From positions 10,292,001-10,356,000 of the forward strand of contig NC_079169.1 in NCBI RefSeq assembly GCF_947568905.1: a stretch of 64,000 nucleotides of DNA, written 5' to 3'. The notes beneath the pieces were generated by a model. The model worked only from the letters and a program-made list of their open reading frames with translations, was not told where the DNA came from and did not search any database. This DNA comes from Ostrea edulis. Taxonomy: Eukaryota. The position numbers and the translations under genes were made by a program. Of the stretch, positions 342 to 58,900 are shown one piece after another (positions within the stretch are counted from its first letter, which is position 1; each line of letters opens with the position of its first letter).

Positions 342-3300
342 TCACCCTCTGATTTCCTCACATATAAAATAAAAACCAGTATAGGTGCATGCTGCATCGA
401 CCCACTTCCCATGTGCAGTCTGGTACATAGCGACACAGTTTTCTTTGGTATAAGCTGTGGGTTCCCCTGGGGAGAAGTTGTTAACCGTGATCTCCCTCAT
501 GTCTGATGAGTATATCCATCGATGTTCTTCCAGAATGTCAGATATGCCGATCCAATAATTTTTACCTAAATCACAACAATTACTTAGTACAGTAATACTG
601 ACGTTTACATGGCAAACCACAAACTCTAGTGATCAACGAAGCTAAATTCTTTTTTTTTAAAATATCTCTTTCTCTTCTCTCTGTATCTCTCCCGGTCATT
701 CAGCAATAGGGCATGTTATCTGATTAAATACAGATCTCTGAAACAGTAACCAAGGCAGCTGGATTTCAATCAGATTGGGTATTTTATCATCGATAATGGG
801 TAAACGTTTTTTCTCCTAACTTCTACAAATTTCAAACTTCCTCGAATTTCGAATCTTTCCCCGATTCTATTGGTCATTAAGGTTCCGTCTGAGTTTAATT
901 GACGGGTGTCTTCTATAATGGTCTACCCCAGTGCCCTCTACAACTTGTGAGTATCATACCGGGGTGTTATGCATGAAAATGTTTGTCGTAGCATCAATAC
1001 GAGACAACAAGCGACAAGCAGTCCGATGATGTACCTTATAGATTATCAAAATCACACTGAAACATTGCCCAAACAAAATAGGTTTAAGAATGAATCTTTT
1101 AATGCTTTAAAATAGATAGTAATGCAAACACTATTGCAGGGCATGCCAGACTTGTCTTTCTATAAAATGTAAATAAAAAATACTTTCATTTTCAATCCTA
1201 ACGTTCTTCATCATCTTAAAGAAAAAAGAAATCTTCAAATAATCCCATTCGAAACAATACGAAATCACCCTTTTTATCGATTGAAATTATGATGAAATAG
1301 ATTTAGGGCTTGACCAGGTGTGCAGGTCTTTACAAACTGGGGAAGACTCGATTCAGTGAATAATGTGAACCATGAAGTCCTTGTGTTCAAGATCTTCATT
1401 TTGTGTTTATTGAATATACTGAACATCAAAGTTTGAGATATAGTTCAAAGAAACAGAGTTCCAACCTGTGCTTTGACTGTGGCTTGTAAGAAAGTTCAAT
1501 TCTCCATCCGTCCTCGGCTCGGCTAACTTTGTATGAAACTGTTGACATGTAGCCTATATTGGTACAAATATAAATGCATTATTGCTATGGATCAGAACAA
1601 ACCCTTACAGCGCAGCAGAATTTAATAACAAAAGGCAATTAAACAATTAATTATATTTATTTACAATTAATAATTCAAAGGAAATTGTAACAATAAATAT
1701 CAAAATCCGTGCCGAACTGAATCTACACGCACAAAATACTTAATTCCAAAATCCTATTTCCCAGTATAATAAAAATCCAAAAAGAGCTTGTCTAAACCAG
1801 AGCTTTTTTTATCATAAAAATTCACAACATTGTCACTGTGTTCTTAATATAAAGCAGTACCGATTCCTACATCATTATCATCTACAGTAAGCTTAAATTG
1901 CTTTAAAAAACCTGGAGGTGAAGGAACTAGACTACTCTTGAGAACAGATTTAATTTAACAAAATGAATCGTCGCAGTCATTTGCCCATAAAAAATTAGCC
2001 CTCTTTTGCAATAAGTGTTTAAGTGGACCAACTTTATAGAAAAATTTGGACCAAAGTTTCTGTAAAAGCCTGTCAATTTATCAATTTATGATATTTGTTT
2101 ACAATTGATAATTCAAAGAAAATTGTAACAATAGCAAAATACTGAATTACGGTAGTTGCATTGAACAATAAATATAAAAATCCGTGCCGAACTATATGTA
2201 CACACACAAAATAGTTAATTCAAACATCCTAGTTCCCAGTATTATAAAAATCAAAACAGCTTGTCTAAACCAAAGCTCTTTTATAATAAAAATTCACAAT
2301 GTATTTATGATAAGAATGAATTTTCTAGTACAATCTTGAAAGACAATGATGCAACCATTACGTTAATTTTCTACTAAAGTAAACATCAAGCTCTAGATCA
2401 ATCTAGGTCACATGTATCAATTGAGTGCAAGTAGTACACAACAAGAAGTAAACATCGAGATCTAGAACAATCTAGGTCACAGGTGTCAATTGAGTGCAAG
2501 TAGTACACAACAATTATGTTTTAATCAAATGACACTTGGGAACTTAAACATTATTATATCCTTTCCTGAATGGATCCAGTACAGTTACCTAACATTCATT
2601 CTGTCCAATACCGCGAGCTTACACAAATTATATTCAATACCACAAGCTTACACTAATCATATTCAAAACCACGAGCTTACACTAATTATATTCAATATTG
2701 CGAGCTTACAAAGGTTATATTCAATACAGCAAGCTTACACTAATTATATTTATTACCACGAGCTTACACTAATTATATTCAATACAACGAGCTTACACTA
2801 ATCATATTCAATATTGCGAGCTTACACAAATTATATTCAATACCGTGAGCTTACACTAATTATATTCAATACCATGAGTTTACACCAATTATATTCAATA
2901 CCGTGAGCTTACACAAATTATATTCAATACCATGTACGTACACTAGTTATATTCAATACTGCAAGCTTACATAAATTATATTCAATACCACGAGCTTATG
3001 CTAATTATATTCAATACCGCCAGCTTACACTCATTATATTCAATATGGCAAGATTACACTAATCATATTCAATACCGCAATCTTACACAAATCATATTCA
3101 ATACCGCGAGAATACACTTATTATATTCAATACCGCGAGCTTACACACATTATATTCAATATCATGAGCTTACACTAATCATATTCAATACCGCGAGCTT
3201 ACACAAATTCTATTCAATACCGTGACCTTACACAAATTATATTTGAAACTGCGAGCTTACACTTATATTCAATACCGAGAGCTTACACTAATTATATTCA

Positions 3301-4590
3301 ATACCGTGAGCTTACACTAATTATATTCAATACCGTGAGCTTACACTAATTATATTCAATACCGAGAGCTTACACTAATTATATTCAATACCGTGAGCTT
3401 ACACTAATTATATTCAATACCGAGAGCTTACACTAATCATATTCAATACCGAGAGCTTACACTAATTATATTCAATAACGTGATCTTATACTAATCAATG
3501 CCTTAACCTTACACTTTGAATACGAATATAGAAACCCCTAGGGTCGTTTTTCAACGGGGCCACTAGTTAGTGTTACATCGGCGACTATATATTCCAATGG
3601 ACGTCAATGAAAGGTGAAGATAACAAACAGTGATCAATCTCATAACTCCTATTAGCAATACAAAATAGACAGTTGGGCAAACACGGACCCCTGGACACAC
3701 CAGATGTGGGATCAGATGTAAACATGCCTAGGAGGAGTAAACATTCCTTGTTGATCGGTCACAAGGTGACTAATAACCAGTACATACTATATATACGAGG
3801 ATCATTAAAATTATGTAGACTTTCGCCAGACATGGTAGACATAATCAGACAATAAATGATATTTAATATTATTGAAGAATAATTGATATATCACGATATA
3901 TCAGAAAATACTTTAAAAATTAAAACCGAAAAATGAATTCACAGCGATCTAGTTCGTCAATACAACCTCGCATTGGGTCAAATGCTGTCTGACGTGTTTC
4001 ATACCGACTGTTAAGCCGTTCTTGGCACACTGATTTGACTGCGGATAACTCCGTTTACCTGATCAGGATATGGGGCTCACGGCGGGTGTGACCGGTCAAC
4101 AGGGGATGCTTACTCCTCCTAGGCACCTGATCCCACCTCTGGTGTGTCCAGGGGTCCGTGTTTGCCCAACTATCTATTTTGTATTGCTTATAGGAGTTAT
4201 GAGATTGATCACTNNNNNNNNNNNNNNNNNNNNNNNNNNNNNNNNNNNNNNNNNNNNNNNNNNNNNNNNNNNNNNNNNNNNNNNNNNNNNNNNNNNNNNN
4301 NNNNNNNNNNNNNNNNNNNNNNNNNNNNNNNNNNNNNNNNNNNNNNNNNNNNNNNNNNNNNNCGACCAGCAACATGAACAACGGTGAATAGTCAAATGTT
4401 CGGGACGAAATATGTAATATTCAATATGTCGACGCTTTGTTATCAGCTTTTGTAGTGTAGTTGTAGATTTAGTTTCCTTTTCTATTTAGTTTTCTTTTTT
4501 ATGTAAATATTTTATTGTCCTGAAGAAGGGACAGGTTGTCCTGAAAATTTGACAATTCACTGTTGATCGTGTCGTTGGTCATTTTTAGTG

Positions 4591-4645
<55 letters not shown>

Positions 4646-9963: not shown

Positions 9964-10003
<40 letters not shown>

Positions 10004-10070
10004 AAATTATTTTTTCTTGGCATCGGGGTAGAATAAAGTAAAAAAAATAAAATCCAATGCTCAAACTTTT

Positions 10071-10108
10071 ATCTATAGCGCTTTCGCCCTGCGGGCTCAT
10101 CAGTAGAT
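10071..10108 (-). ncRNA. Minimal type I hammerhead ribozyme motif (left arm of palindrome)
   Basis: Minus strand reads ATCTA-CTGATGA-GCCC.GCA.GGGC-GAAA-GCGC-TA-TAGAT. Confidence 0.75.
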
Positions 10109-10116
10109 TTTTAAAA

Positions 10117-10154
10117 ATCTACTGACGAGCCCGCAGGGCGAAAGCGCTATAGAT
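10117..10154 (+). ncRNA. Minimal type I hammerhead ribozyme motif (right arm of palindrome)
   Basis: ATCTA-CTGACGA-GCCC.GCA.GGGC-GAAA-GCGC-TA-TAGAT. Stem I is 5 bp, stem II is 4 bp, stem III is the palindrome AGCGCT, and the predicted cleavage is after UA at 10149. Confidence 0.75.
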
Positions 10155-10168
10155 AAAAGTTTGAGCAT

Positions 10169-10302
10169 NNNNNNNNNNNNNNNNNNNNNNNNNNNNNNNN
10201 NNNNNNNNNNNNNNNNNNNNNNNNNNNNNNNNNNNNNNNNNNNNNNNNNNNNNNNNNNNNNNNNNNNNNNNNNNNNNNNNNNNNNNNNNNNNNNNNNNNN
10301 NN
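10169..10302. other. Assembly gap (N)
   Basis: Run of N. Confidence 1.
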
Positions 10303-18394: not shown

Positions 18395-18758
18395 TATAGT
18401 TGATGGTACAGGGATTTCAACAGTCTCGATTGAAGTCAGCATTTCGCAAATTCTATGGTCGTTATAACGATCTAGTTCGTCAATACAACCTCGCATTGGG
18501 TCAAGTGCTGTCTGACGTGTTTCATACCGATTGTTAAGCCGTTCTTGGCACACTGATTTTGACTGCGGATAACTCCGTTTACCTGATCAGGTTATGGGGC
18601 TCACGGCGGGTGTGACCGGTCAACAGGGGATGCTTACTCCTCCTAGGCACCTGATCCCACCTCTGGTGTGTCCAGGGGTCCGTGTTTACCCAGCTATCTA
18701 TTTTGTATTGCTTATAGGAGTTATGAGATTGATCACTGTTCGTTATCTTCACCTTGCA
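18395..18758 (+). mobile_element. Naiad-type PLE 3' fragment
   Basis: Near-identical to the RT C-terminus and tail of 43286-43650. It ends cttcaccttgcat. Confidence 0.88.
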
Positions 18759-18899
18759 TATACATTATTATAAGCTTTCCTATAAAAGATACATTTTGAG
18801 GGTTTCCTCAAAACTTTTAACAGCATCATATAAGCGAAAGTACATTACTAAACTTTTGAAGAGTATGGCGGCTGCTACCTCAAATCGCCGATTACCCTG

Positions 18900-21465: not shown

Positions 21466-24400
21466 TCACCCTCCGATTTCCTCACATATAAAATAAAAAC
21501 CAGTATAGGTGCATGCTGCATCGACCCACTTCCCATGTGCAGTCTGGTACATAGCGACACAGTTTTCTTTGGTATAAGCTGTGGGTTCCCCTGGGGAGAA
21601 GTTGTTAACCGTGATCTCCCCCATGTCTGATGAGTATATCCATCGATGTTCTTCCAGAATGTCAGATATGCCGATCCAATACTTTTTACCTAAATCACAA
21701 CAATTACTTAGTACAGTAATACTGACGTTTACATGGCAAACCACAAACTCTAGTGATCAACGAAGCTAAATTCTTTTTTAAAAAATATCTCTTTCTCTTC
21801 TCTCTGTATCTCTCCCGGTCATTCAGCAATAGGGCATGTTATCTGATTAAATACAGATCTCTGAAACAGTAACCAAGGCAGCTGGATTTCAATCAGATTG
21901 GGTATTTTATCATCGATAATGGGTAAACGTTTTTTCTCCTAACTTCTACAAATTTCAAACTTCCTCGAATTTCGAATCTTTCCCCGATTCTATTGGTCAT
22001 TAAGGTTCCGTCTGAGTTTAATTGACGGGTGCCTTCTATAATGGTCTACCCCAGTGCCCTCTACAACTTGTGAGTATCATACCGGGGTGTTATGCATGAA
22101 AATGTTTGTCGTAACATCAATACGAGACAACAAGCGACAAGCAGTCCGATGATGTACCTTATAGATTATCAAAATCACACTGAAACATTGCCCAAACAAA
22201 ATAGGTTTAAGAATGAATCTTTTAATGCTTTAAAATATATAGTACTGCAAACACTATTGCAGGGCATGCCAGACTTGTCTTTCTATAAAATGTAAATAAA
22301 AAATACTTTCATTTTCAATCCTAACGTTCTTCATCATCTTAAAGAAAAAAGAAATCTTCAAATAATCCCATTCGAAACAATACGAAATCACCCTTTTTAT
22401 CGATTGAAATTATGATGAAATAGATTTAGGGCTTGACCAGGTGTGCAGGTCTTTACAAACTGGGGAAGACTCGATTCAGTGAATAATGTGAACCATGAAG
22501 TCCTTGTGTTCAAGATCTTCATTTTGTGTTTATTGAATATACTGAACATCAAAGTTTGAGATATAGTTCAAAGAAACAGAGTTCCAACCTGTGCTTTGAC
22601 TGTGGCTTGTAAGAAAGTTCAATTCTCCATCCGTCCTCGGCTCGGCTAACTTTGTATGAAACTGTTGACATGTAGCCTATATTGGTACAAATATAAATGC
22701 ATTATTGCTATGGATCAGAACAAACCCTTACAGCGCAGCAGAATTTAATAACAAAAGGCAATTAAACAATTAATTATATTTATTTACAATTAATAATTCA
22801 AAGGAAATTGTAACAATAAATATCAAAATCCGTGCCGAACTGAATCTACACGCACAAAATACTTAATTCCAAAATCCTATTTCCCAGTATAATAAAAATC
22901 CAAAAAGAGCTTGTCTAAACCAGAGCTTTTTTTATCATAAAAATTCACAACATTGTCACTGTGTTCTTGATATAAAGCAGTACCGATTCCTACATCATTA
23001 TCATCTACAGTAAGCTTAAATTGCTTTAAAAAACCTGGAGGTGAAGGAACTAGACTACTCTTGAGAACAGATTTAATTTAACAAAATGGATCGTCGCAGT
23101 CATTTGCCCATAAAAAATTAGCCCTCTTTTGCAATAAGTGTTTAAGTGGACCAACTTTATAGAAAAATTTGGACCAAAGTTTCTGTAAAAGCCTGTCAAT
23201 TTATCAATTTATGATATTTGTTTACAATTGATAATTCAAAGAAAATTGTAACAATAGCAAAATACTGAATTACGGTAGTTGCATTGAACAATAAATATAA
23301 AAATCCGTGCCGAACTATATGTACACACACAAAATAGTTAATTCAAACATCCTAGTTCCCAGTATTATAAAAATCAAAACAGCTTGTCTAAACCAAAGCT
23401 CTTTTATCATAAAAATTCACAATGTATTTATGATAAGAATGAATTTTCTAGTACAATCTTGAAAGACAATGATGCAACCATTACGTTAATTTTCTACTAA
23501 AGTAAACATCAAGCTCTAGATCAATCTAGGTCACATGTATCAATTAAGTGCAAGTAGTACACAACAAGAAGTAAACATCGAGATCTAGAACAATCTAGGT
23601 CACAGGTGTCAATTGAGTGCAAGTAGTACACAACAATTATGTTTTAATGAAATGACACTTGGGGACTTAAACATTATTATATCCTTTCCTGGATGGATCC
23701 AATACAGTTACCTAACATTCATTCTGTCCAATACCACGAGCTTCCACAAATTATATTCAATACCACAAGCTTACACTAATCATATTCAAAACCACGAGCT
23801 TACACAAATTATATTCAATACTAAAAACTTACACTAATCATATTCAAAACCACGAGCTTACACAAATTATATTCAATATTGCCAGCTTACAAAGGTTATA
23901 TTCAATACAGCAAGCTTACACTAATTATATTTATTACCACGAGCTTACACAAATTATATTCAATACCAAAAGCTTACACTAATCATATTCAAAACCACGA
24001 GCTTACACAAATTACATTCAATACCAAAAACTTACACTAATCATATTCAAAACCACGAGCTTACACAAATTATATTCAATATTGCCAGCTTACAAAGGTT
24101 ATATTCAATACAGCAAGCTTACACTAATTATATTTATTACCACGAGCTTACACTAATTATATTCAATACAACGAGCTTACACTAATCATATTCAATATTG
24201 CGAGCTTACAAAAATTATATTCAATACCATGAGCTTACACTAATCATATTCAATACCTCGAGCTTACACAAATTATATTCAATACCATGTGCGTACACTA
24301 GTTATATTCAATACTGCAAGCTTACATAAATTATATTCAATACCACGAGCTTATGCTAATTATATTCAATACCGCCAGCTTACACTCATTATATTCAATA

Positions 24401-25510
24401 TGGCAAGATTACACTAATCATATTCAATACCGCAATCTTACACAAATCATATTCAATACCGCGAGAATACACTTATTATATTCAATACCGCGAGCTTACA
24501 CAAATTATATTCAATATCATGAGCTTACACTAATCATATTCAATATTGCGAGCTTACACAAATTCTATTCAATACCGTGACCTTACACAAATCATATTTG
24601 AAACTGCGAGCTTACACTTCTAATATTCAATATTTCGAGCTTACACATATTATTTTCAATACCGAGAGCTTACACTAATCATATTCAATACCGAGAGCTT
24701 ACACTAATCATATTCAATACCGAGAGCTTACACTAATCATATTCAATACCGTGATCTTATACTAATCAATGCCTTAACCTTACACTTTGAATACGAATAT
24801 AGAAACCCCTGGGGTCGTTTTTCAACGGGGCCACTAGTTAGTGTTACATCGGCGACTATATATTGCAATGGACGTCAATGAAAGGTGAAGATAACAAACA
24901 GTGATCAATCTCATAACTCCTATTAGCAATACAAAATAGACAGTTGGGCAAACACAGACCCCTGGACACACCAGAGATGGGATCAGATGCCTAGGAGGAG
25001 TAAACATTCCTTGTTGATCGGTCACACACGCCGTGTTTTAAAAGGTGACTAATAACCAGTACATACTATATATACGAGGATCATTAAAAATTATGTAGAC
25101 TTTTGCCAGACATGGTAGACATAATCAGACAATAAATGATATTTAATATTATTGAAGAATAATTGATATATCACGATATATCAGAAAATACTTTAAAACT
25201 TAAAACCGAAAAATGAATTCACAGCGATCTAGTTTGTCAATACAACCTCGCATTGGGTCAAATGCTGTCTGACGTGTTTCATACCGATTGTTAAGCCATT
25301 CTTGGCACACTGATTTGACTGCGGATAACTCCGTTTACCTGATCAGGATATGGGGCTCACGGCGCGTGTGACCGGTCAACAGGGGATGCTTACTCCTCCT
25401 AGGCACCTGATTCCACCTCTGGTGTGTCCAGGGGTCCGTGTTTGCCCAACTATCTATTTTGTATTGCTTGTAGGAGTTATGGGATTGATCACTGTTCGTT
25501 ATCTTCACCT

Positions 25511-25557
<47 letters not shown>

Positions 25558-25803: not shown

Positions 25804-25850
<47 letters not shown>

Positions 25851-26154
25851 CCAAATAGAAAGAGTTGATATCACACAGTCAAAATAATTCAATAAAAAAA
25901 ATCAGGAAAATATACAGTTCCAAAATATATTTAAATCACTAGCGCTTTCTGGATTTTAACATCCATCCTCAGGTGAATACAAATTTTAAATAATGAATAC
26001 AAAGTTGTTTATCTTAGAGACTCTAAGATAAACAACTTTGTATTCATTATTTAAAATTTGTATTCACCTGAGGATGGATGTTAAAATCCAGAAAGCGCTA
26101 GTGATTTAAATATATTTTGGAACTGTATATTTTCCTGATTTTTTTATTGAATTA

Positions 26155-26199
<45 letters not shown>

Positions 26200-42339: not shown

Positions 42340-43285
42340 GTTCGTCTGAAGAATGGAAGTTCTCGACGTTTGTTGTTATCAATATATTACGCTATCTTTA
42401 CCTATTCTGCTTCAAGTAATCTCTAGCCTACACACGTAGTAAAGACATGAGGCACATTTCATACTTTACAATTTCACCTAAACCCCGATCGTTTTAAACA
42501 ATTATTAATAAAAGGAAGCACAGACCTAGGATTTCCGCAATTGCCTAAGTTGTACTCATTTCAATTTTTAAAATCATTTAGTCTTCATCAGCTCTAACAT
42601 TTACTGACAAACCACTAGGATCCTATGTATCAATGTGAGAGTGGAACAGGACACCAGATTTGGATTTCTTGAAAAATCCCTCATGCTTAAGTTTGATATT
42701 TATTTTATTTCATCAGTCAAAATTTACTTAAAATCCCAGACTTAAGTCCAAATTTCGACCTCAGATTTTTTATACCTGAGAATTTTTATTTGTCACCGAA
42801 TTTCAGAAACCCTTACTTACCTCAAACACTTCGTTCGTGTTTCATGAGTAGGTCTACAGCGTTGAAATTGATGGTTTAAACCCATCTTTCTCGGTCACTT
42901 CATCTTATCTGAAAATGTTTTAACAGATGTCTCTTTGAAATTACACTTGAAATATTAACTGAGCTTCAGCTTGCCTATGGAAGGAGGTTGCCTTGCAGAT
43001 GAAGATAAAACCTCATTGATACTGCCCTGAGCGCTAAGCATAGGTGTGTATTTGAATTTTTTTGTGGTACCTCACCTACAGTTGTTGACATCTCAGTGTG
43101 AGTGAAAAATTCTTGAAGGGGCGTAAAATAAACAAACCCAAGTTCCTTGGTACATCACGATAGTTTACAATTTGCAACATATCATACCGTATAACGAGTA
43201 TTTTCTGCGGTTGCCCTTTTTGCGGTTAGGACTAATCCGTAAAAATTACAATCACAAATTTTAAAGTATCATTTGGTCGTTATAA

Positions 43286-44360
43286 TGCAAGGTGAAGATA
43301 ACGAACAGTGATCAATCTCATAACTCCTACAAGCAATACAAAGTAGATAGTTGGGCAAAGACGGACCCCTGGACACACCAGAGTTGGGATCAGGTTCCTA
43401 GGAGGAGTAAGCATCCCCTGTTGACCGGTCACACCTGCCGTGAGCCCTATATCCTGATCAGGTAAACGGAGTTATCCGCAGTCAAAATCAATGTGCCAAG
43501 AACGGCTTAACAATCGGTATGAAACACGTCAGACATCATTTGACCCAAGGCGAGGTTGTATTGACGAACTAGATCGTTATAACGACCATAGAATTTGCGA
43601 AATGCTGACTTCAATCGAGACTGTTGAAATCCCTGTACCATCAACTTGTTTGTCAGTAGCTTACCTCGATTTAAAAACTGACTATATCCAGAACAAGCTC
43701 TTGCATATCGAATCAGTTGAGATATATAAACACCATATGCAGGTGATAATGGAATATTGCTACACAAATATGGGAAGTTGACGATGGAGAAGCTGAAATC
43801 ATCCCGTTTGTCATACAGTTGAGTTGTCATTTTGCCGTTAATGTTTACTTTCAATAAAATATCTAAGTATGAAGCAGAAGTGGACGACTCTGTGGTGTCC
43901 TTTATTTCGAGCTCACAGGGATATATCAAATCGACATATGAATGAAAGCTATCATTGTTAATAGACAAAACGTCATCGATATATCTAAAAGTCGAATTGA
44001 AGGTCACAGCGAGAGATTTTTTCTTCTCACGTAGAAGTTTTTGAATAAATTCTGCTTCATATGAATGTAAAAACAGGTCAGCTAACAAAGGAGCACAGTT
44101 TGTGCCCATGGGAATTCCAACAGACTGTTGAAAGACCTGATCACCAAAGACCACGAAGATATTGTCAATGAGGAACTCTAGCATATATTTTTTATTTCAA
44201 CTTCAGAGTACTTGTGCGTGGAATCAGAGTGGTGTTTAACAAAGTAAGTTTTGAATGACTGTTCACTAGATATGAATATTTCCGTTTTCCGTTTTTGTTG
44301 AAGAAGCAACTGTCTATGATGTCAAAAAGTCTAGTCTTTAATTTATCGTGAATCATGGAA
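43286..44360 (-). mobile_element. Naiad-type (N-terminal EN clade) Penelope-like element, 5'-truncated, best-preserved RT
   Basis: ORF 43507-44184 has GIPMGTNCAPLLADLFL, FRYIDDVL, YLDI, LYDKRDDF and AYGVYISQLIRYARAC. It stops right after the RT thumb with no C-terminal GIY-YIG. An upstream frame (HDKLKTRL...NKNGKRKY) is joined by a frameshift. Confidence 0.85.
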
Positions 44361-51400: not shown

Positions 51401-53524
51401 GATAAGGTGCCTGGGAGGTGTAAGCATCCCCTGTCACACCAGATGTAAGCCCTATATCTCCATCAGGTAAACGGAACAATATTTAGTCAAAATAAGTGTG
51501 CAAAGAAGGGCCTATCAATTGCTATAAAACATGTCAGACAGCTTTTTACCCAATGACAGGTTGTATTAGTAAATTAGATCGTTATAATGACCATCAAATT
51601 GCGACCCGCTGACTATAAATGAGACTGTTGAAATCCCTGTAACATCATTTGAGAGACATGAACACAATATACAGGTGATAATAAAATATTGTTACATAAA
51701 TACGGAAAGTTGAAGATGGCCATGCTAAAGTCATCCCGTTTGACATAAATTTCAGTCGTTAGCTTGCCGTTGATATCAATGTTCTATAGAATATCTAAGT
51801 ATGAAGCAGATGTGGAAGACTCTGTTGTGACTTTTATTTCGAGTTCACTGAAATATATATCAAATGGATGGGTGAATGAAAATGAATAATGTTACTAGAT
51901 AAAACGTCATCCATATATGTATGTCAAAATATTGAGTTGAAGATCACAGTATGTTGAAGCTTTAGAATAAATTTTGCCCTGCAAAAATATATTTTAAAAA
52001 AACAAACAACAGGTCAGCTACTAAAGGAGCAGAATTCGTGCCCATGGGCATTCCAACAGACTGTTGGAATACCTGATCACCAAAGACTACGAAGATATTG
52101 TCAATGAGGACCTCTAACATCTTTTTGATGTCAACTTTACTTGTGGAAAAAATCATAGCGGTGCTTAACAAAGTTATTTTTGAATGACTGATCACAAGGT
52201 CTGAACATTTCATTTTTCCATTCTTATTGTGGTATGTCAAAAAGTCTAGTCTTTCATTTATCGTGAGGAATGGCCGTGTCAAGTGTTGAAAAGTCATACA
52301 TTTTCATGTTGCTGAATTGAGAAAAGTTTTTTTTATTCCAAATCTACGAAAAGTCTTTGGAATGTTTTTATAAGCCATATTTGTCGTGGTACAATACGTT
52401 TGAAGTGTCTCCTTCAAACCAGTTAATATCTTATATCATGCCATGCATAAAATAATAACATTTATCACATATTTGGTGTGTTAATTTTATATAATATTCA
52501 ATGCGAAGATATAAAAGAAATGTATTAATTTCTTTGTTTGAACTCGTTGAATTATTTTCTTTTGTTGGAATGATGAATAATCATGAGGTAGGCGGGGTTA
52601 GACAGAGACGATTAGAAGGAATTCATTCTGACAATTTTGGAGTACTCGAGAAAATCATTTTGATTTAAGAAAGAAATATTTTATATTGCATACATGATTA
52701 ATTCATTTTTGATTGATTATGTGGTGCTACTGAGTTTCACTGACAAAGTGTTTTTCATATTACAAAAGTTTTAAATTCGGTTTCGTTGGTAAATTTGATG
52801 AGAAAATTGAGTTTTACTTTAATGGTGATGTGAAATGACGGGAATTATTTGTTAAGAGCGTCCATTTGTATCACACGTCAAACAATGCAAAAATAACATA
52901 TATCATATATTAATGTTAGACGAGGTGAAGGAACAAAAGAAAAACATATACTTGGTTTAATAAACAGAATATATGCATGCAAGGTGAAGATAACGAACAG
53001 TGATCAATCTCATAACTCCTAAAAGCAATACAAAATAGATAGTTGGGCAAACACGGACTTCTGGACACACCAGAGGTGGGATCAGGTGGCTAGGAGGAGT
53101 AAGCATCCCCTGTTGACCGGTCACACCCGCCGTGAGCCCCATATCCTGATCAGGTAAACGGAGTTATGTATCGATATATACAACTAAACTATATACATGT
53201 ATCGATTTACAACTTGAATATATACATGTACCTATATACAACTAGAATATATACATGTATCTATATACAACTAGAATATATACATGCATCTATATACAAC
53301 TAGAGTATGCAAGGTGAAGATAAGGAACAGTGATCAATCTCATAACTCCTACAAGCAATACAAAATAGATAGTTGGGCAAACACGGACCCCTGGACACAC
53401 AAGAGGTGGGATCAGGTGCCTAGGAGGAGTAAGCATCCCCTGTTGACCGGTCACACCCGCCGTGAGCCCCATGCATGTATCTATATACAACTAGAATATA
53501 TACATGTATCTATATACAACTAGA

Positions 53525-55946: not shown

Positions 55947-58900
55947 TTACATAACGTCAGTTTCACAGATGAATTTAGATAGAATTGAGCAGATATGGTC
56001 TCCCCAGCGTCCGTGGTAGGCCTGCCACAATATCACACAGTTTCCAGTGGTATGCTGATCCGGTTCACCAGGGGAAAAATCGTTAACAGTGATGACCGTC
56101 TGGTCAGAATATTCCCATCTTCCTTCCTCAATGATATCAGATATACCGATCCAGAAATTTCCCCCTGTTTCCACAAACAAATATCAGAAAAACAAACATA
56201 CCATGTTCATCACAAGGCATGCATACTCTCTTTACTGGCGTATAAATATTGTAGTACCTCGTTAATCCGAACACAGGTTGTTTACAGGAACTATATATCG
56301 TGAAGAGTTACGCAGCCAAAAAACGCAATATTTTATAAAGAAAATGTCTTAATATTGCTCAAAATGGGAAAATTAGTTTAGTTTATGTTCCTAATCAGTT
56401 GGATATCATAATCAAGAAATGAATATCGGTGCGACCTTTATACCGGTGTGACCTTTATACCGGTGTGACCTTTATACCGGTGCGACCTTTATACCTTGGG
56501 ATTGGCTGTGGCTGATTAAAAACTTGGATTCAGCTGCAGTTCTTGGTTCGGCCAACTTGGAATGGAATACACTACAAACTCCCTGAAATATAAAAAATAC
56601 AAAGAAAAATATGCAGGGTCACCCCATTTCAGCATGACCCCGGGTCACCCTCTTTTCTACACAGTTTACTACGCTGTAAAAGTAGTCCCACATAAAAGTG
56701 AAAGTACAATGCAGACAATGTATAATATCAAAGGAAAATGATTATTGAGCAAGTCAATATTGATCATTTACATGTCATCATTTTAAGCCAAAAATCGTCT
56801 AATATCAAAAATGATAATTCACTGTTATCTGCAACCCCCGATTTTTCCAAATACAAGAATGATATTAACCTAGCTTATTCAACTTGGAATATCATCCTTT
56901 TATTTATTTGCAATCTATTTACAGATAGTTATTATAAGATAATGTTGCACCGGGGTGACCTCTGGTCACCTATTGATTTCAAACATTACAATTATGTTAC
57001 TATTCATCATATTTTATGATGCTACATAGTACAACAGTGTCAAGATGAAATGTTTAGCTCACCTGAACCAAAGCATGAAATGAGCATTTTTTTCCATTTG
57101 TCTATCCGTTTATAAATGTTTTATCTACAGGGCATGTTTTCACCAAACCTCAAGTAAACGTTGTCCAAATTTATGTTCAGATGGTTCATGGGTAATTTGT
57201 CTAAATTATGTTATGGATTGACTCTGTAATTCTTCATTGGAATTGTTGTAAGTAGAAAATATAACGTATATAAAGCGTGTCTGTAATATGTGTTGAAGAG
57301 ATAACGGGAAGTATGAATTTCGGACGTAACAGGAGATTGGTCATGTGGTCACTCTACCAGTTATTTGGAATAGAAGTAGAAAAATATACAAAGGGTGACC
57401 TAAGGTCATCCATGCACTGAAATGTCGGTTACCTCGGGACACTTTTCTATGATGTGAAATTACAATAGGTAACCAGATGTAACCCTTATATGATATTTAT
57501 TATGGGATGAACGGAAGTAACCCTTTTATAATAGTGACCACAGCTAACCTTTGTAGAACCATTAATAAACAGGTTGGAAACATTTTCCCTATATCGATGT
57601 TATTCCTCTAAAGCATTTTAAGGTTCTATATAATGGTGAAGTTTATTGATCTGTAAGCATCGAAACAAAACTGTCAATCAGTCAGGAAAAGAAATGTAGA
57701 ATTATAATAATAGTAATAAGATTAAGAAAAACACAGAAGTGGAAAGACCTACATGTAATGAAAGGATTCATAGCAGAATGTAAATTGGAGCATGTCTACC
57801 TGCCGAAAGATTTATGTTTCGACAATGACAAAGTCATGCAGAAAATACATTCACTCTTTTCTAACAGATAAGAGTTTCACTTATATTTATTATAAGGCGC
57901 ATTAATTTCAAGATATAAGAACTACTTTCAGTTGACCCTGGGACGTACTTGAGGGTATGTATTATCTTTCTGCGAAAAATATAGCGACCAGCTATTTAGA
58001 TTGTACACCCGTTTTAATAATATTATGTTGTTTCCTTGTAATGAAAGGTAAAGATAAGGAACAGTGATCAATCTCATAACTCCTATAAGCAATACAAAAT
58101 AGAGAGTTGGACAAACACGGACCCCTGGAAACACTAGAGGTGGGATCAGGTGACTAGGAGGAGTAAGCATTCCCTGTCGACCGGTCACACCCGCCGTGAG
58201 CCCTATATCCTGATCAGGTAAACGGAGTATACCGTATTCAAAATCAGTGTCCCAAGAACGGCCTAACACTCGATATATAAAAAAAACGTCAGACAGCATT
58301 TGACTCAATGATAGGTTGTATTGACGAAGTAGATCGTTATAACGACCATAGAATTTGCAACATGCTGTAATATAAGTATGGAAAAAAAACTTACGGCAGC
58401 ATCTGCCCAGCTGTCTAATGTATGGCTGAACAAGTAACATTTATCTTGAAACTGTATCCAACCCACATTACATCCTATTCAAGAGAATAAAAGTAATAGA
58501 ATGGCAAGCAGAATTAGCTGTCTAAATCAGAATCATCAAAGCAATGTATATCAATATACAATATACAACTAAAACATATACATATATCTATATACAACTA
58601 GAATATATACATAATATTGATATATAACTAGAATATATACATAATATTGATATACAACTAGAATATATACATAATATTGATATACAACTAGAATATATAC
58701 ATGATATTGATATACAACTAGAATATATACATGATATTGATATGCATCTAGAATATATACACAATATTGATACACAACTAGAATATATACAAATAATTTA
58801 ATTCTTATTGTATCCTTGTCTCTGATTGGTCAATGTTCAATTGAGGAACGCAAGTTATTTTTGTACAACCTGGTTTGATATGGGGACACACCCCCTTGAA

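What the first reader, a model, noticed from the sequence alone, without database searches (positions are those of the whole stretch)
25884..26155. ~270-bp near-perfect palindrome carrying a hammerhead on each strand, inserted into (TA)n in a lectin intron
The arms are ~135 bp with a 1-nt spacer (CTTAGAG-A-CTCTAAG). Each arm contains TCAC-CTGAGGA-TGGAT/ATCCA-GAAA-GCGC-TA-GTGA. It is flanked by (TA)n on both sides, is not next to a gap, and is absent from copy A (plain (TA)n at 4593-4641). Its stems I and II differ in sequence from the 10057 element while keeping pairing and the same GAAAGCGCTA core, which is covariation-like support. Two independent inverted-dimer ribozyme inserts at TA microsatellites in one window suggest a recurrent class of tiny, non-coding, ribozyme-bearing foldback elements, probably PLE-mobilised and retrozyme-like. 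It lies ~70 nt from the CTL-3 exon 2 donor, so the pre-mRNA holds a long hairpin plus a sense ribozyme that the hairpin would mask.
Basis: partly seen in the sequence, partly recalled or inferred. Interest (0 to 1): 0.78.

Follow-up and report, generated by a model that had tools for sequence, protein, structure and literature searches.

The report
Head-to-head Penelope retrotransposon stub with hammerheads
The 270-base palindrome is real, but it is the usual footprint of a young oyster Penelope-like retrotransposon: two short head-to-head copies of its own 3' end, each with the family's small hammerhead motif, landed in a TA microsatellite inside a lectin intron.

Summary
Observation confirmed. 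The arms 25895-26019 and 26021-26145 are 100% complementary with a 1-nt spacer, and extend with one indel to 25884 and 26155. A CUGANGA...GAAAGCGCUA hammerhead core lies on each strand, (TA)n flanks both sides, and the paralogous lectin copy has a clean empty site.

The "new class of tiny foldback ribozyme element" reading is not supported. Each arm is the last 135 nt of the 3' UTR of an autonomous Penelope-like element (PLE). [quoted passage not shown]

The locus shows the published PLE insertion features: severe 5' truncation, an inverted partner copy, a 36-nt tail at one end only (25848-25883), and a (TA)n target. About 780 copies of this 3' end exist in the genome, and roughly 60% of sampled loci have an inverted partner, nearly always head-to-head. 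Their junctions differ in sequence, so they are independent integration by-products, not copies of one foldback unit.

The second palindrome, at 10057, is the same thing from a sister PLE family. The hammerhead is the known metazoan PLE type, expected to work only as a tandem dimer. Here it is single per strand and buried in a -202 kcal/mol hairpin.

Two earlier follow-ups of this scan reached the same reading at other loci of this genome. Read support was inconclusive.

The parts
25805..25847 (.). (TA)n, left remainder of the target microsatellite
   Evidence: Sequence. Aligns with the uninterrupted (TA)n of paralog copy A.
25848..25883 (-). 36-nt PLE 'tail' extension, present at this end only
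   Evidence: The same 36 nt follow the 3' end of one arm, and never both, in every inverted pair examined. Matches the 30-40 bp one-sided tail of PLE insertions in PMC8557442.
25884..26019 (-). Left arm: minus-strand copy of the last ~135 nt of the PLE 3' UTR (136 nt, one extra A)
   Evidence: (99% match).
25936..25976 (-). Type I hammerhead motif on the minus strand (helix I, CUGAGGA, helix II, GAAA, GCGC, UA, helix I); predicted cut between 25940 and 25939
   Evidence: Pattern match at 25940-25972 (-). Mirror image of the + strand motif.
26020..26020 (.). 1-nt junction between the two copies. It lies inside the element's own 8-nt palindrome AGACGTCT and is 3 nt shorter than the perfect junction seen at 3 other loci.
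26021..26155 (+). Right arm: plus-strand copy of the last 135 nt of the PLE 3' UTR, ending without a tail
   Evidence: 100% identical to at least 18 other genomic copies, including 3' ends of ORF-bearing copies.
26064..26104 (+). Type I hammerhead motif on the plus strand: UCAC / CUGAGGA / UGGAU-GUUAAA-AUCCA / GAAA / GCGC / UA / GUGA; predicted cut after A26100
   Evidence: pattern; the MFE fold of the isolated 49-mer forms helices I and II; covariation across families.
26156..26195 (.). (TA)n, right remainder of the target microsatellite
26228..26311 (-). C-type lectin exon. Its donor lies 71 nt from the element, which sits in the following ~3.6 kb intron.
   Evidence: Translation TGCSIGFVQFLDKCYFF.... 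Downstream exons are at ~22540-22650 and ~21475-21700, the last matching Pfam Lectin_C at 4.3e-9.
9999..10168 (.). Second head-to-head stub, from a sister PLE family. The left arm carries a 34-nt tail and hammerheads lie on both strands. It runs into the N stretch, which I did not read.
   Evidence: Long copies of that family end in a homologous GIY-YIG ORF C-terminus.

Best explanation
The palindrome is a dead-on-arrival insertion of a young Penelope-like retroelement (PLE). The element is a canonical C-terminal EN+ type: a single ORF with a reverse transcriptase and a GIY-YIG endonuclease, a DKG motif, a CX4CxxC linker, and cysteines between GIY and YIG.

**Shown.** One integration event in a (TA)n microsatellite left two extremely 5'-truncated copies of the element's 3' UTR. 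Each is 135 nt, they are joined head-to-head, and the 36-nt PLE tail is on one side only. Each copy carries the family's minimal type I hammerhead, which sits 52-92 nt from the 3' end.

**Inferred: how the palindrome formed.** The near-equal arm lengths, and the junction inside the element's own short palindrome AGACGTCT, suggest that reverse transcription stopped about 135-138 nt in. The polymerase then turned back on the nascent strand (snap-back or self-priming, or a template switch).

**Inferred: the ribozyme here.** In full-length copies, two direct hammerheads (upstream pseudo-LTR and 3' end) are thought to process the transcript as a dimer. In this stub there is only one sense motif per strand, helix III is 1-2 bp with a palindromic GCGC, and the motif is locked in a 135-bp perfect hairpin. 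It is therefore almost certainly inert as a ribozyme.

**Speculative.** For the host lectin gene it is a long intronic hairpin 71 nt from a splice donor. Any effect on splicing or small-RNA production is untested.
For: **Identity with the PLE 3' end.**
- The arm matches at least 44 scored places at 94-100% identity, with 1045 first-look candidates.
- Inward, long copies continue into an ORF with YLDD and a Pfam GIY-YIG match at 1e-5.

**Structure of a full-length copy (L113).** It consists of an inverted 616-nt copy, a direct 160-nt pseudo-LTR and a ~3.7-kb body. This is the arrangement drawn in PMC8557442 Fig. 2.

**One-sided tail.** In all 25 head-to-head pairs mapped, one arm runs into the tail and the other stops at the body end.

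**(TA)n target and empty paralogous site.**

**Census.**
- The hammerhead-bearing 36-mer occurs 782 times.
- In the first 100 hits there are 24 head-to-head (-,+) pairs and 1 (+,-) pair.
- 9-10 of 20 apparent solos also have a short or diverged inverted partner.

**Junctions.**
- Junction sequences are heterogeneous, with 0-8 nt fillers.
- Inverted-repeat lengths include 58, 157, 178, 201, 305, 358, 569 and 793 nt.
- Five loci share the AGACGTCT junction, 3 perfect and 2 with small deletions.

**Hammerhead.**
- The motif occurs 4 times in the window against 0 expected, and about 1993 times genome-wide against 1 in the control.
- Helices I and II covary across families.
- The architecture matches the metazoan PLE hammerheads of PMC4209133: short helix III with a palindromic loop, active only as dimers.
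- The hairpin folds at -202 kcal/mol against -9.2 for the isolated motif.
Against: - No Rfam hammerhead model matches, even at E<=10.
- The isolated motif folds no better than shuffles (z = -1.1).
- Helix II closes with U10.1-A11.1 rather than the usual G-C.
- Self-cleavage is untested.
- No read or contig spans the locus. The public runs available are short-read contigs that break at (TA)n, so the palindrome at this particular locus rests on the assembly alone.
- Truncation points cluster (d~101-115, 141, 78) rather than being random. A propagating short template could also produce that pattern.
- The snap-back mechanism is inferred, not shown.
- The PLE clade was judged from motifs only, without a phylogeny.
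Confidence: 0.88

Rival explanations
1. A distinct non-autonomous, retrozyme-like or foldback element. In this reading the ~270-bp inverted hammerhead dimer is itself a unit that is transcribed and re-mobilised in trans by PLE reverse transcriptase.
For: - Short head-to-head stubs are very common: about 20 of 24 pairs in the sample have arms under 150 nt.
- Junction positions cluster.
- Five loci share the junction site used in the window.
- PLE-derived non-autonomous retrozymes do exist in animals (PMC7229834 and bioRxiv 10.64898/2026.07.22.740005).
Against: - Junction sequences and fillers differ among loci, even within a cluster.
- Arms are identical to autonomous copies, with no private substitutions.
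- Arm lengths form a continuum up to ~800 nt.
- Solo copies show the same truncation hot spots.
- Animal retrozymes are direct tandem repeats that place two sense hammerheads on one RNA. Here the two motifs are on opposite strands.
Confidence: 0.07
2. Assembly artefact: a chimeric foldback read or a mis-joined repeat created a perfect palindrome that is not in the animal's DNA.
For: - The arms are 100% identical, which is a typical artefact signature.
- PMC8557442 warns that PLE structures cause assembly problems.
- The sister element at 10057 abuts an N stretch.
- No spanning read was found.
Against: - The same architecture, with the one-sided tail and varied junctions, recurs at hundreds of loci on all chromosomes.
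- Orientation is strongly biased, 24 (-,+) pairs against 1 (+,-). That is unexpected for random chimeras.
- The unique flanks on both sides are collinear with the paralog.
- There is no gap next to this element.
Confidence: 0.04
3. A MITE or foldback DNA transposon with 135-bp terminal inverted repeats and a TA target preference (Stowaway or Tc1/mariner-like).
For: Inverted termini, (TA)n flanks, small size and many near-identical copies.
Against: - The 'TIR' is the 3' UTR of an RT/GIY-YIG retroelement.
- Inverted-repeat length is not fixed.
- The ends are asymmetric, with a tail on one side only.
- Solo, non-inverted copies are common.
- No transposase-bearing master copy was seen.
Confidence: 0.01

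Closest known systems
Canonical C-terminal EN+ Penelope-like elements (Neptune/Nematis-type, with a CX2-5CxxC linker) and their complex insertions (Arkhipova 2006; Craig et al. 2021, PMC8557442)
   Same: - RT plus C-terminal GIY-YIG in a single ORF.
- DKG motif.
- Cysteines between GIY and YIG.
- CX4CxxC linker.
- Pseudo-LTR.
- Inverted 5'-truncated copy.
- 30-40 bp one-sided tail.
- (TA)n insertion bias.
- Hammerhead in the pseudo-LTR / 3' UTR.
   Different: - This locus holds only the last 135 nt, twice, with no coding part.
- Clade assignment rests on motifs read by eye, not on a tree.
- About 60% of loci having an inverted partner, and the near-equal arm lengths, may be more extreme than usually described.
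Metazoan PLE/type I hammerhead ribozymes with minimal helix III (Cervera & de la Pena 2014, PMC4209133; newt, schistosome and cricket satellite hammerheads)
   Same: - Type I topology.
- CUGANGA and GAAA cores.
- U-H cleavage site (UA).
- Helix III reduced to 1-2 bp with a palindromic GCGC that allows dimerisation.
- Many covarying families within one genome.
   Different: - Helix II of this family closes with U-A instead of G10.1-C11.1.
- No Rfam model hit.
- Here the two motifs are on opposite strands, so the dimeric active form cannot form in cis.
Animal non-LTR retrozymes (Cervera & de la Pena 2020, PMC7229834; Li et al. 2026 preprint)
   Same: PLE-derived, non-coding, hammerhead-bearing short repeats.
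   Different: - Retrozymes are head-to-tail tandem monomers that yield circRNAs.
- This is a head-to-tail-less, head-to-head pair with heterogeneous junctions, and there is no evidence of RNA circles.
L1 5' inversions (twin priming) and hairpin-primed cDNA foldbacks
   Same: An inverted, 5'-truncated partner is generated during target-primed reverse transcription.
   Different: - L1 inversions are not perfect palindromes with both 3' ends facing outward.
- The PLE mechanism is unknown, and the snap-back reading here is an inference.

Membership tests
Penelope-like element (C-terminal EN+) insertion | The sequence is part of an element whose single ORF encodes an RT followed by a GIY-YIG endonuclease | tested here: met
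   The arm is 100% identical to the 3' end of copies whose ORF matches Pfam RVT_1 (5e-10) and GIY-YIG (1e-5).
Penelope-like element (C-terminal EN+) insertion | PLE-specific motifs: DKG, CCHH with two Cys between GIY and YIG, CX2-5CxxC linker | tested here: met
   Read by eye in the translation: EADKGG; LLYCIICNGCGEEYIG; CGDSRCGTC. No profile or phylogeny was run.
Penelope-like element (C-terminal EN+) insertion | Pseudo-LTR (partial direct tandem copy), often with an inverted 5'-truncated copy upstream | tested here: met
   L113 has an inverted 616-nt copy, a direct 160-nt copy and a 3.7-kb body. Variable inverted repeats at other loci.
Penelope-like element (C-terminal EN+) insertion | [quoted passage not shown] | tested here: met
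   The 36-nt tail lies at 25848-25883 only. The same holds in every pair mapped.
Penelope-like element (C-terminal EN+) insertion | Microsatellite insertion bias, here (TA)n | tested here: met
   All copies shown abut (TA)n. The paralog's empty site is plain (TA)n.
Type I hammerhead ribozyme (metazoan PLE type) | Conserved core CUGANGA ... GAAA ... U-H cleavage site, in type I order | tested here: met
   4 matches against 0 expected; about 1993 genome-wide against 1 in the control.
Type I hammerhead ribozyme (metazoan PLE type) | Helices I and II supported by compensatory changes | tested here: met
   In one search, helix I pairs 1-3 and helix II pairs 2-3 show 3-4 Watson-Crick pair types across 9 selected variants. 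The only exception is one A-C at helix II pair 3. Rows L104, L105, L106, L108 and L111 were left out as degenerate or chance matches.
Type I hammerhead ribozyme (metazoan PLE type) | Short helix III capped by a palindromic loop (dimer-competent) | tested here: met
   A-GCGC-U is invariant in all variants. Feature as described in PMC4209133.
Type I hammerhead ribozyme (metazoan PLE type) | Match to the curated covariance model (Rfam Hammerhead families) | tested here: not met
   No hammerhead hit at the gathering threshold or at E<=10, even on a 71-nt slice. The minimal helix III probably falls outside the models.
Type I hammerhead ribozyme (metazoan PLE type) | Self-cleavage | not testable with these tools
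   Needs in vitro transcription. The literature reports no activity for single PLE motifs and low activity for dimers (PMC4209133).
Animal non-LTR retrozyme | Head-to-tail tandem monomers, each with a sense hammerhead | tested here: not met
   The two motifs are inverted. In the sample, 24 pairs are (-,+) and 1 is (+,-), and no short direct tandem was seen among the loci mapped.
Animal non-LTR retrozyme | Unit-length circular RNA | not testable with these tools
   No RNA run holds the stretch.
MITE / foldback DNA transposon | Fixed terminal inverted repeats and symmetric ends with a target-site duplication | tested here: not met
   Inverted-repeat length varies from 17 to 793 nt and the ends are asymmetric because of the tail.

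The most novel reading that the evidence does not exclude
The population of these stubs may record how PLEs make their inverted copies.
- Arms are mostly equal in length: about 15 of 19 sampled pairs are within 7 nt, and several are exactly equal.
- Junctions sit at the element's own short palindromes or AT-rich palindromic stretches (AGACGTCT at d141-134, TTTAAA/AAATTT at d~106-98, ATTTAAAT at d52-45).
- Orientation is almost always head-to-head, with one tail.

Together this points to snap-back (self-primed) synthesis on the nascent cDNA rather than twin priming. Such a signature has not, to my knowledge, been worked out for PLEs, whose inverted-repeat formation is still called unexplained in PMC8557442. 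A further untested possibility is that hundreds of perfect intronic hairpins of PLE 3' ends feed small-RNA silencing of the family.
Probability: 0.35. Interest if true: 0.45.

Novelty: new member of a known kind. Interest (0 to 1): 0.17.

Why it matters
It matters mainly as a clean-up. Perfect palindromes with back-to-back hammerheads in this oyster genome are ordinary Penelope-like element footprints, not a new ribozyme-bearing mobile element, and similar findings in this genome can be triaged accordingly.

There are two modest points of value:
- The paralogous lectin genes give a natural filled-versus-empty pair. This allows a test of whether a 135-bp perfect intronic hairpin 71 nt from a donor affects splicing or yields small RNAs.
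- The hundreds of young, near-identical stubs with mapped junctions form a usable data set for the still-unknown mechanism by which PLEs create inverted copies and one-sided tails.

Tried and rejected
- **Rfam.** I searched at the gathering threshold on the whole window, then at E<=10 on 601 nt and on 71 nt. There was no hammerhead hit. The only matches were long-hairpin miRNA models, which simply reflect the palindrome.
- **Hammerhead cleavage as the source of truncation.** I considered that inverted partners starting at d~51-52 (L076-L078) mark reverse transcription of hammerhead-cleaved RNA. I rejected this. The predicted cut is at d56|55, and the junctions sit instead in the ATTTAAAT palindrome.
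- **MITE or TIR transposon.** Rejected once long copies showed the RT/GIY-YIG ORF and variable inverted-repeat lengths.
- **Propagating foldback subfamily.** Five loci share the junction site. However, junction sequences across the family are heterogeneous and the arms carry no private substitutions.
- **Read evidence.** The only holders are short-read Logan contigs that break at the (TA)n runs, plus one low-coverage metagenome run. No record spans the locus, and the many 'joints' come from other copies of the family. This was inconclusive.
- **Searches not run.** I did not run the large protein searches, because Pfam plus motifs left the protein identity clear.
- **N stretch.** I did not read or fill the N stretch at 10169-10302. 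A genome-search row reports a match reaching into those coordinates, and I left it alone.

Full report
**1. The observation**

The sequence at 25884-26155 is a near-perfect palindrome. The repeat finder reports arms 25895-26019 and 26021-26145: 125 nt, 100% complementary, 1 nt apart. By eye the arms continue to 25884 and 26155 with a single A8/T7 length difference.

The pattern CTGANGA-N(6-30)-GAAAGCGCTA occurs four times in the window, against none in 100 shuffles. Two matches are in this palindrome, at 25940-25972 (-) and 26068-26100 (+). The other two are in the smaller palindrome at 10076-10149.

(TA)n flanks both sides. The paralogous lectin copy is 96-98% identical in both flanks and has only (TA)n between 4587 and 4642, so it is a clean empty site.

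The host gene runs on the minus strand. One exon is 26228-26311 (TGCSIGFVQFLDKCYFF...). Further exons lie near 22540-22650 and 21475-21700, and the last matches Pfam Lectin_C at 4.3e-9.

The left end carries an extra 36 nt (25848-25883) that the right end lacks.

**2. What the arms are**

A search of the window's own genome (894.8 Mb, 52 contigs, window on C6) with the right arm gave 1045 first-look candidates. 44 places were scored, at 94-100% identity, many of them 100%.

Orienting 30 copies showed two things:
- The outer end either stops at ...TTATTGAATTAT or continues with the same 36-nt tail, and is then followed by (TA)n.
- Inward, most copies continue into a common sequence instead of turning back.

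Complete elements have inverted repeats of 58, 157, 178, 201, 305, 358, 569, ~766 and 793 nt, with or without a unique centre.

The inward sequence is coding. L031 has a 362-aa ORF with YLDD and a C-terminal domain that matches Pfam GIY-YIG. L081 has a 768-codon open frame with Pfam RVT_1 (5e-10) followed by the same C-terminus.

Three motifs are readable in the translation:
- EADKGG, the DKG motif.
- CGDSRCGTC, the CX2-5CxxC linker.
- LLYCIICNGCGEEYIG, with cysteines between GIY and YIG, which is the CCHH signature.

These are the hallmarks of canonical C-terminal EN+ Penelope-like elements with a Neptune/Nematis-type linker. They exclude Hydra, which has DKT and no CCHH, and Penelope/Poseidon, which has no linker (PMC8557442). 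I ran no phylogeny.

One full-length locus (L113) shows an inverted 616-nt copy, then a direct 160-nt partial copy (a pseudo-LTR containing the hammerhead and the tail), then a ~3.7-kb body ending in the same 3' UTR plus tail.

**3. Comparison with the literature**

Craig et al. 2021 (PMC8557442) describe PLE insertions with these features:
- high 5' truncation;
- partial tandems forming pseudo-LTRs;
- often an inverted 5'-truncated copy at the 5' end;
- a 30-40 bp tail, often at only one end;
- hammerheads in the pseudo-LTRs of canonical PLEs;
- insertion bias for microsatellites, (TA)n among them, linked to the CX2-5CxxC linker.

Every one of these features is present here. The window's palindrome is the extreme case: only the last 135 nt were copied, twice, head-to-head.

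**4. How common, and is it a unit of its own?**

A 36-mer spanning the 3' half of the hammerhead occurs 782 times at up to 2 mismatches, with a control of 0.

In the first 100 hits (chromosome order, so unbiased) there are 24 head-to-head (-,+) pairs within 1.5 kb and one (+,-) pair. Of 20 apparent solos that I fetched, 9-10 also have an inverted partner that is diverged, internally deleted or very short, down to 17 nt. So about 60% of loci carry an inverted partner, and most pairs are short.

In each of the 25 head-to-head pairs mapped, exactly one arm has the tail.

Junction positions cluster at about 101-115 nt from the 3' end, at 78, and at 141. The junction sequences and fillers nevertheless differ from locus to locus, and solo copies share the same truncation hot spots.

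The window's junction lies in the element's own palindrome AGACGTCT. Genome-wide five loci have a junction there: three with the perfect CTTAGAGACGTCTCTAAG, one with 2 nt missing, and the window with 3 nt missing.

The arms carry no substitutions that would set the stubs apart from ORF-bearing copies. I conclude that the stubs are independent by-products of PLE integration, not copies of a propagating foldback element.

The equal arm lengths and the junctions at intrinsic palindromes suggest snap-back synthesis. That is inference only.

**5. The second palindrome**

The left arm of the 10057 element (9999-10110) also belongs to a family of several hundred copies (525 candidates). These again show inverted partners that lack the terminal 34 nt, which is a one-sided tail.

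Long copies of that family end in an ORF C-terminus clearly homologous to the first family's...RVHKQQIRDPTIRNTPCSGHFD...AKENYFIKLFKPKLNC against ...RVHRQQINDPSTRNTPCSEHFD...AKENYFIKLFSPKLNKL. It is a sister PLE family. The element abuts an N stretch, which I did not read.

**6. The hammerhead**

The motif has type I order: helix I, CUGANGA, helix II, GAAA, A-GCGC-U, H, helix I. It occurs about 1993 times in the genome, against 1 for the reversed control.

It comes in at least five sequence families. Their helices I and II differ while keeping Watson-Crick pairing. GAAAGCGCUA is the fixed part of the search pattern.

This is the architecture Cervera and de la Pena 2014 describe for metazoan PLE hammerheads. 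Helix III is 1-2 bp, capped by a small palindromic loop. Single motifs are inactive, and dimers in tandem copies are weakly active (PMC4209133).

Points against are:
- no Rfam model matches;
- the isolated 49-mer forms helices I and II in its MFE fold, but no better than shuffles (-9.2 kcal/mol, z = -1.1);
- helix II of this family closes with U-A rather than G-C.

In the palindrome each transcript strand would contain one sense motif and its exact complement. The full hairpin folds at -202 kcal/mol (z = -35.6). Cleavage in this context is therefore very unlikely.

**7. Reads**

Twenty-one public runs hold part of the stretch, and none is on record as RNA. I laid three short-read contig sets and one raw metagenome run.

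The unique flanks are present, and depth over the arms is in the thousands because the family is repeated. Contigs break at both (TA)n runs, and no record spans the locus. The many joints listed are junctions of other copies.

This neither confirms nor refutes the palindrome at this locus. Three things argue against an assembly artefact: the recurrence of the architecture with varied junctions, the strong orientation bias, and the collinear flanks.

**8. Earlier notes of this scan**

Two follow-ups on other loci of the same genome reached the same reading for a 1.1-kb and a 187-bp palindrome. I reached mine independently from the calls above and list those notes as agreeing.

**9. Verdict**

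The proposed new class of retrozyme-like foldback elements is not supported.

This is an ordinary, recent, truncated head-to-head PLE insertion. Interest is low. The remaining value lies in the junction statistics as a clue to PLE integration, and in the filled/empty paralog pair as a natural experiment.

Noticed in passing
window 25300-25520 (also 4020-4213, 18543-18765, 43281-43501, 52969-53167, 58041-58257 and others): A ~220-nt dispersed repeat occurs at least 12 times in the window, in both orientations, at 78-98% identity. Here it lies next to another (TA)n run (25514-25555). It looks like a SINE or MITE-like element and was not characterised.
   Followed up: no
window 23700-24770 and 2600-3500: Long internally repetitive (tandem-repeat) blocks within the lectin introns of both paralogs, 80-84% self-similar at many offsets.
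   Followed up: no
G000 genome-wide, e.g. C1:12462829-12462910, C1:19997319-19997374, C1:25812783-25812838: Further hammerhead families share GAAAGCGCUA but have very short helix II inserts (TTTGAAAT, TGTAAT). Many occur as very tight head-to-head pairs only ~30-60 nt apart. Whether these minimal variants can form helix II at all was not examined.
   Followed up: partly
G000:C9:36774796-37248827: A PLE ORF fragment (query 56-305, 92%) joined to an inverted 75-nt piece recurs at least six times at spacings of about 30-130 kb on C9. This suggests a PLE fragment caught inside a larger segmental or tandem duplication.
   Followed up: no
window 26720-26756: A 38-nt, 89% match to the last 38 nt of the PLE arm, about 570 nt to the right of the palindrome (locus L006 2200-2236). 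It may be an older PLE 3' fragment.
   Followed up: no
window 10115-10191: The genome search reports the right arm of the 10057 element as reaching coordinates that read N in the window (10169 onward).
   Followed up: no
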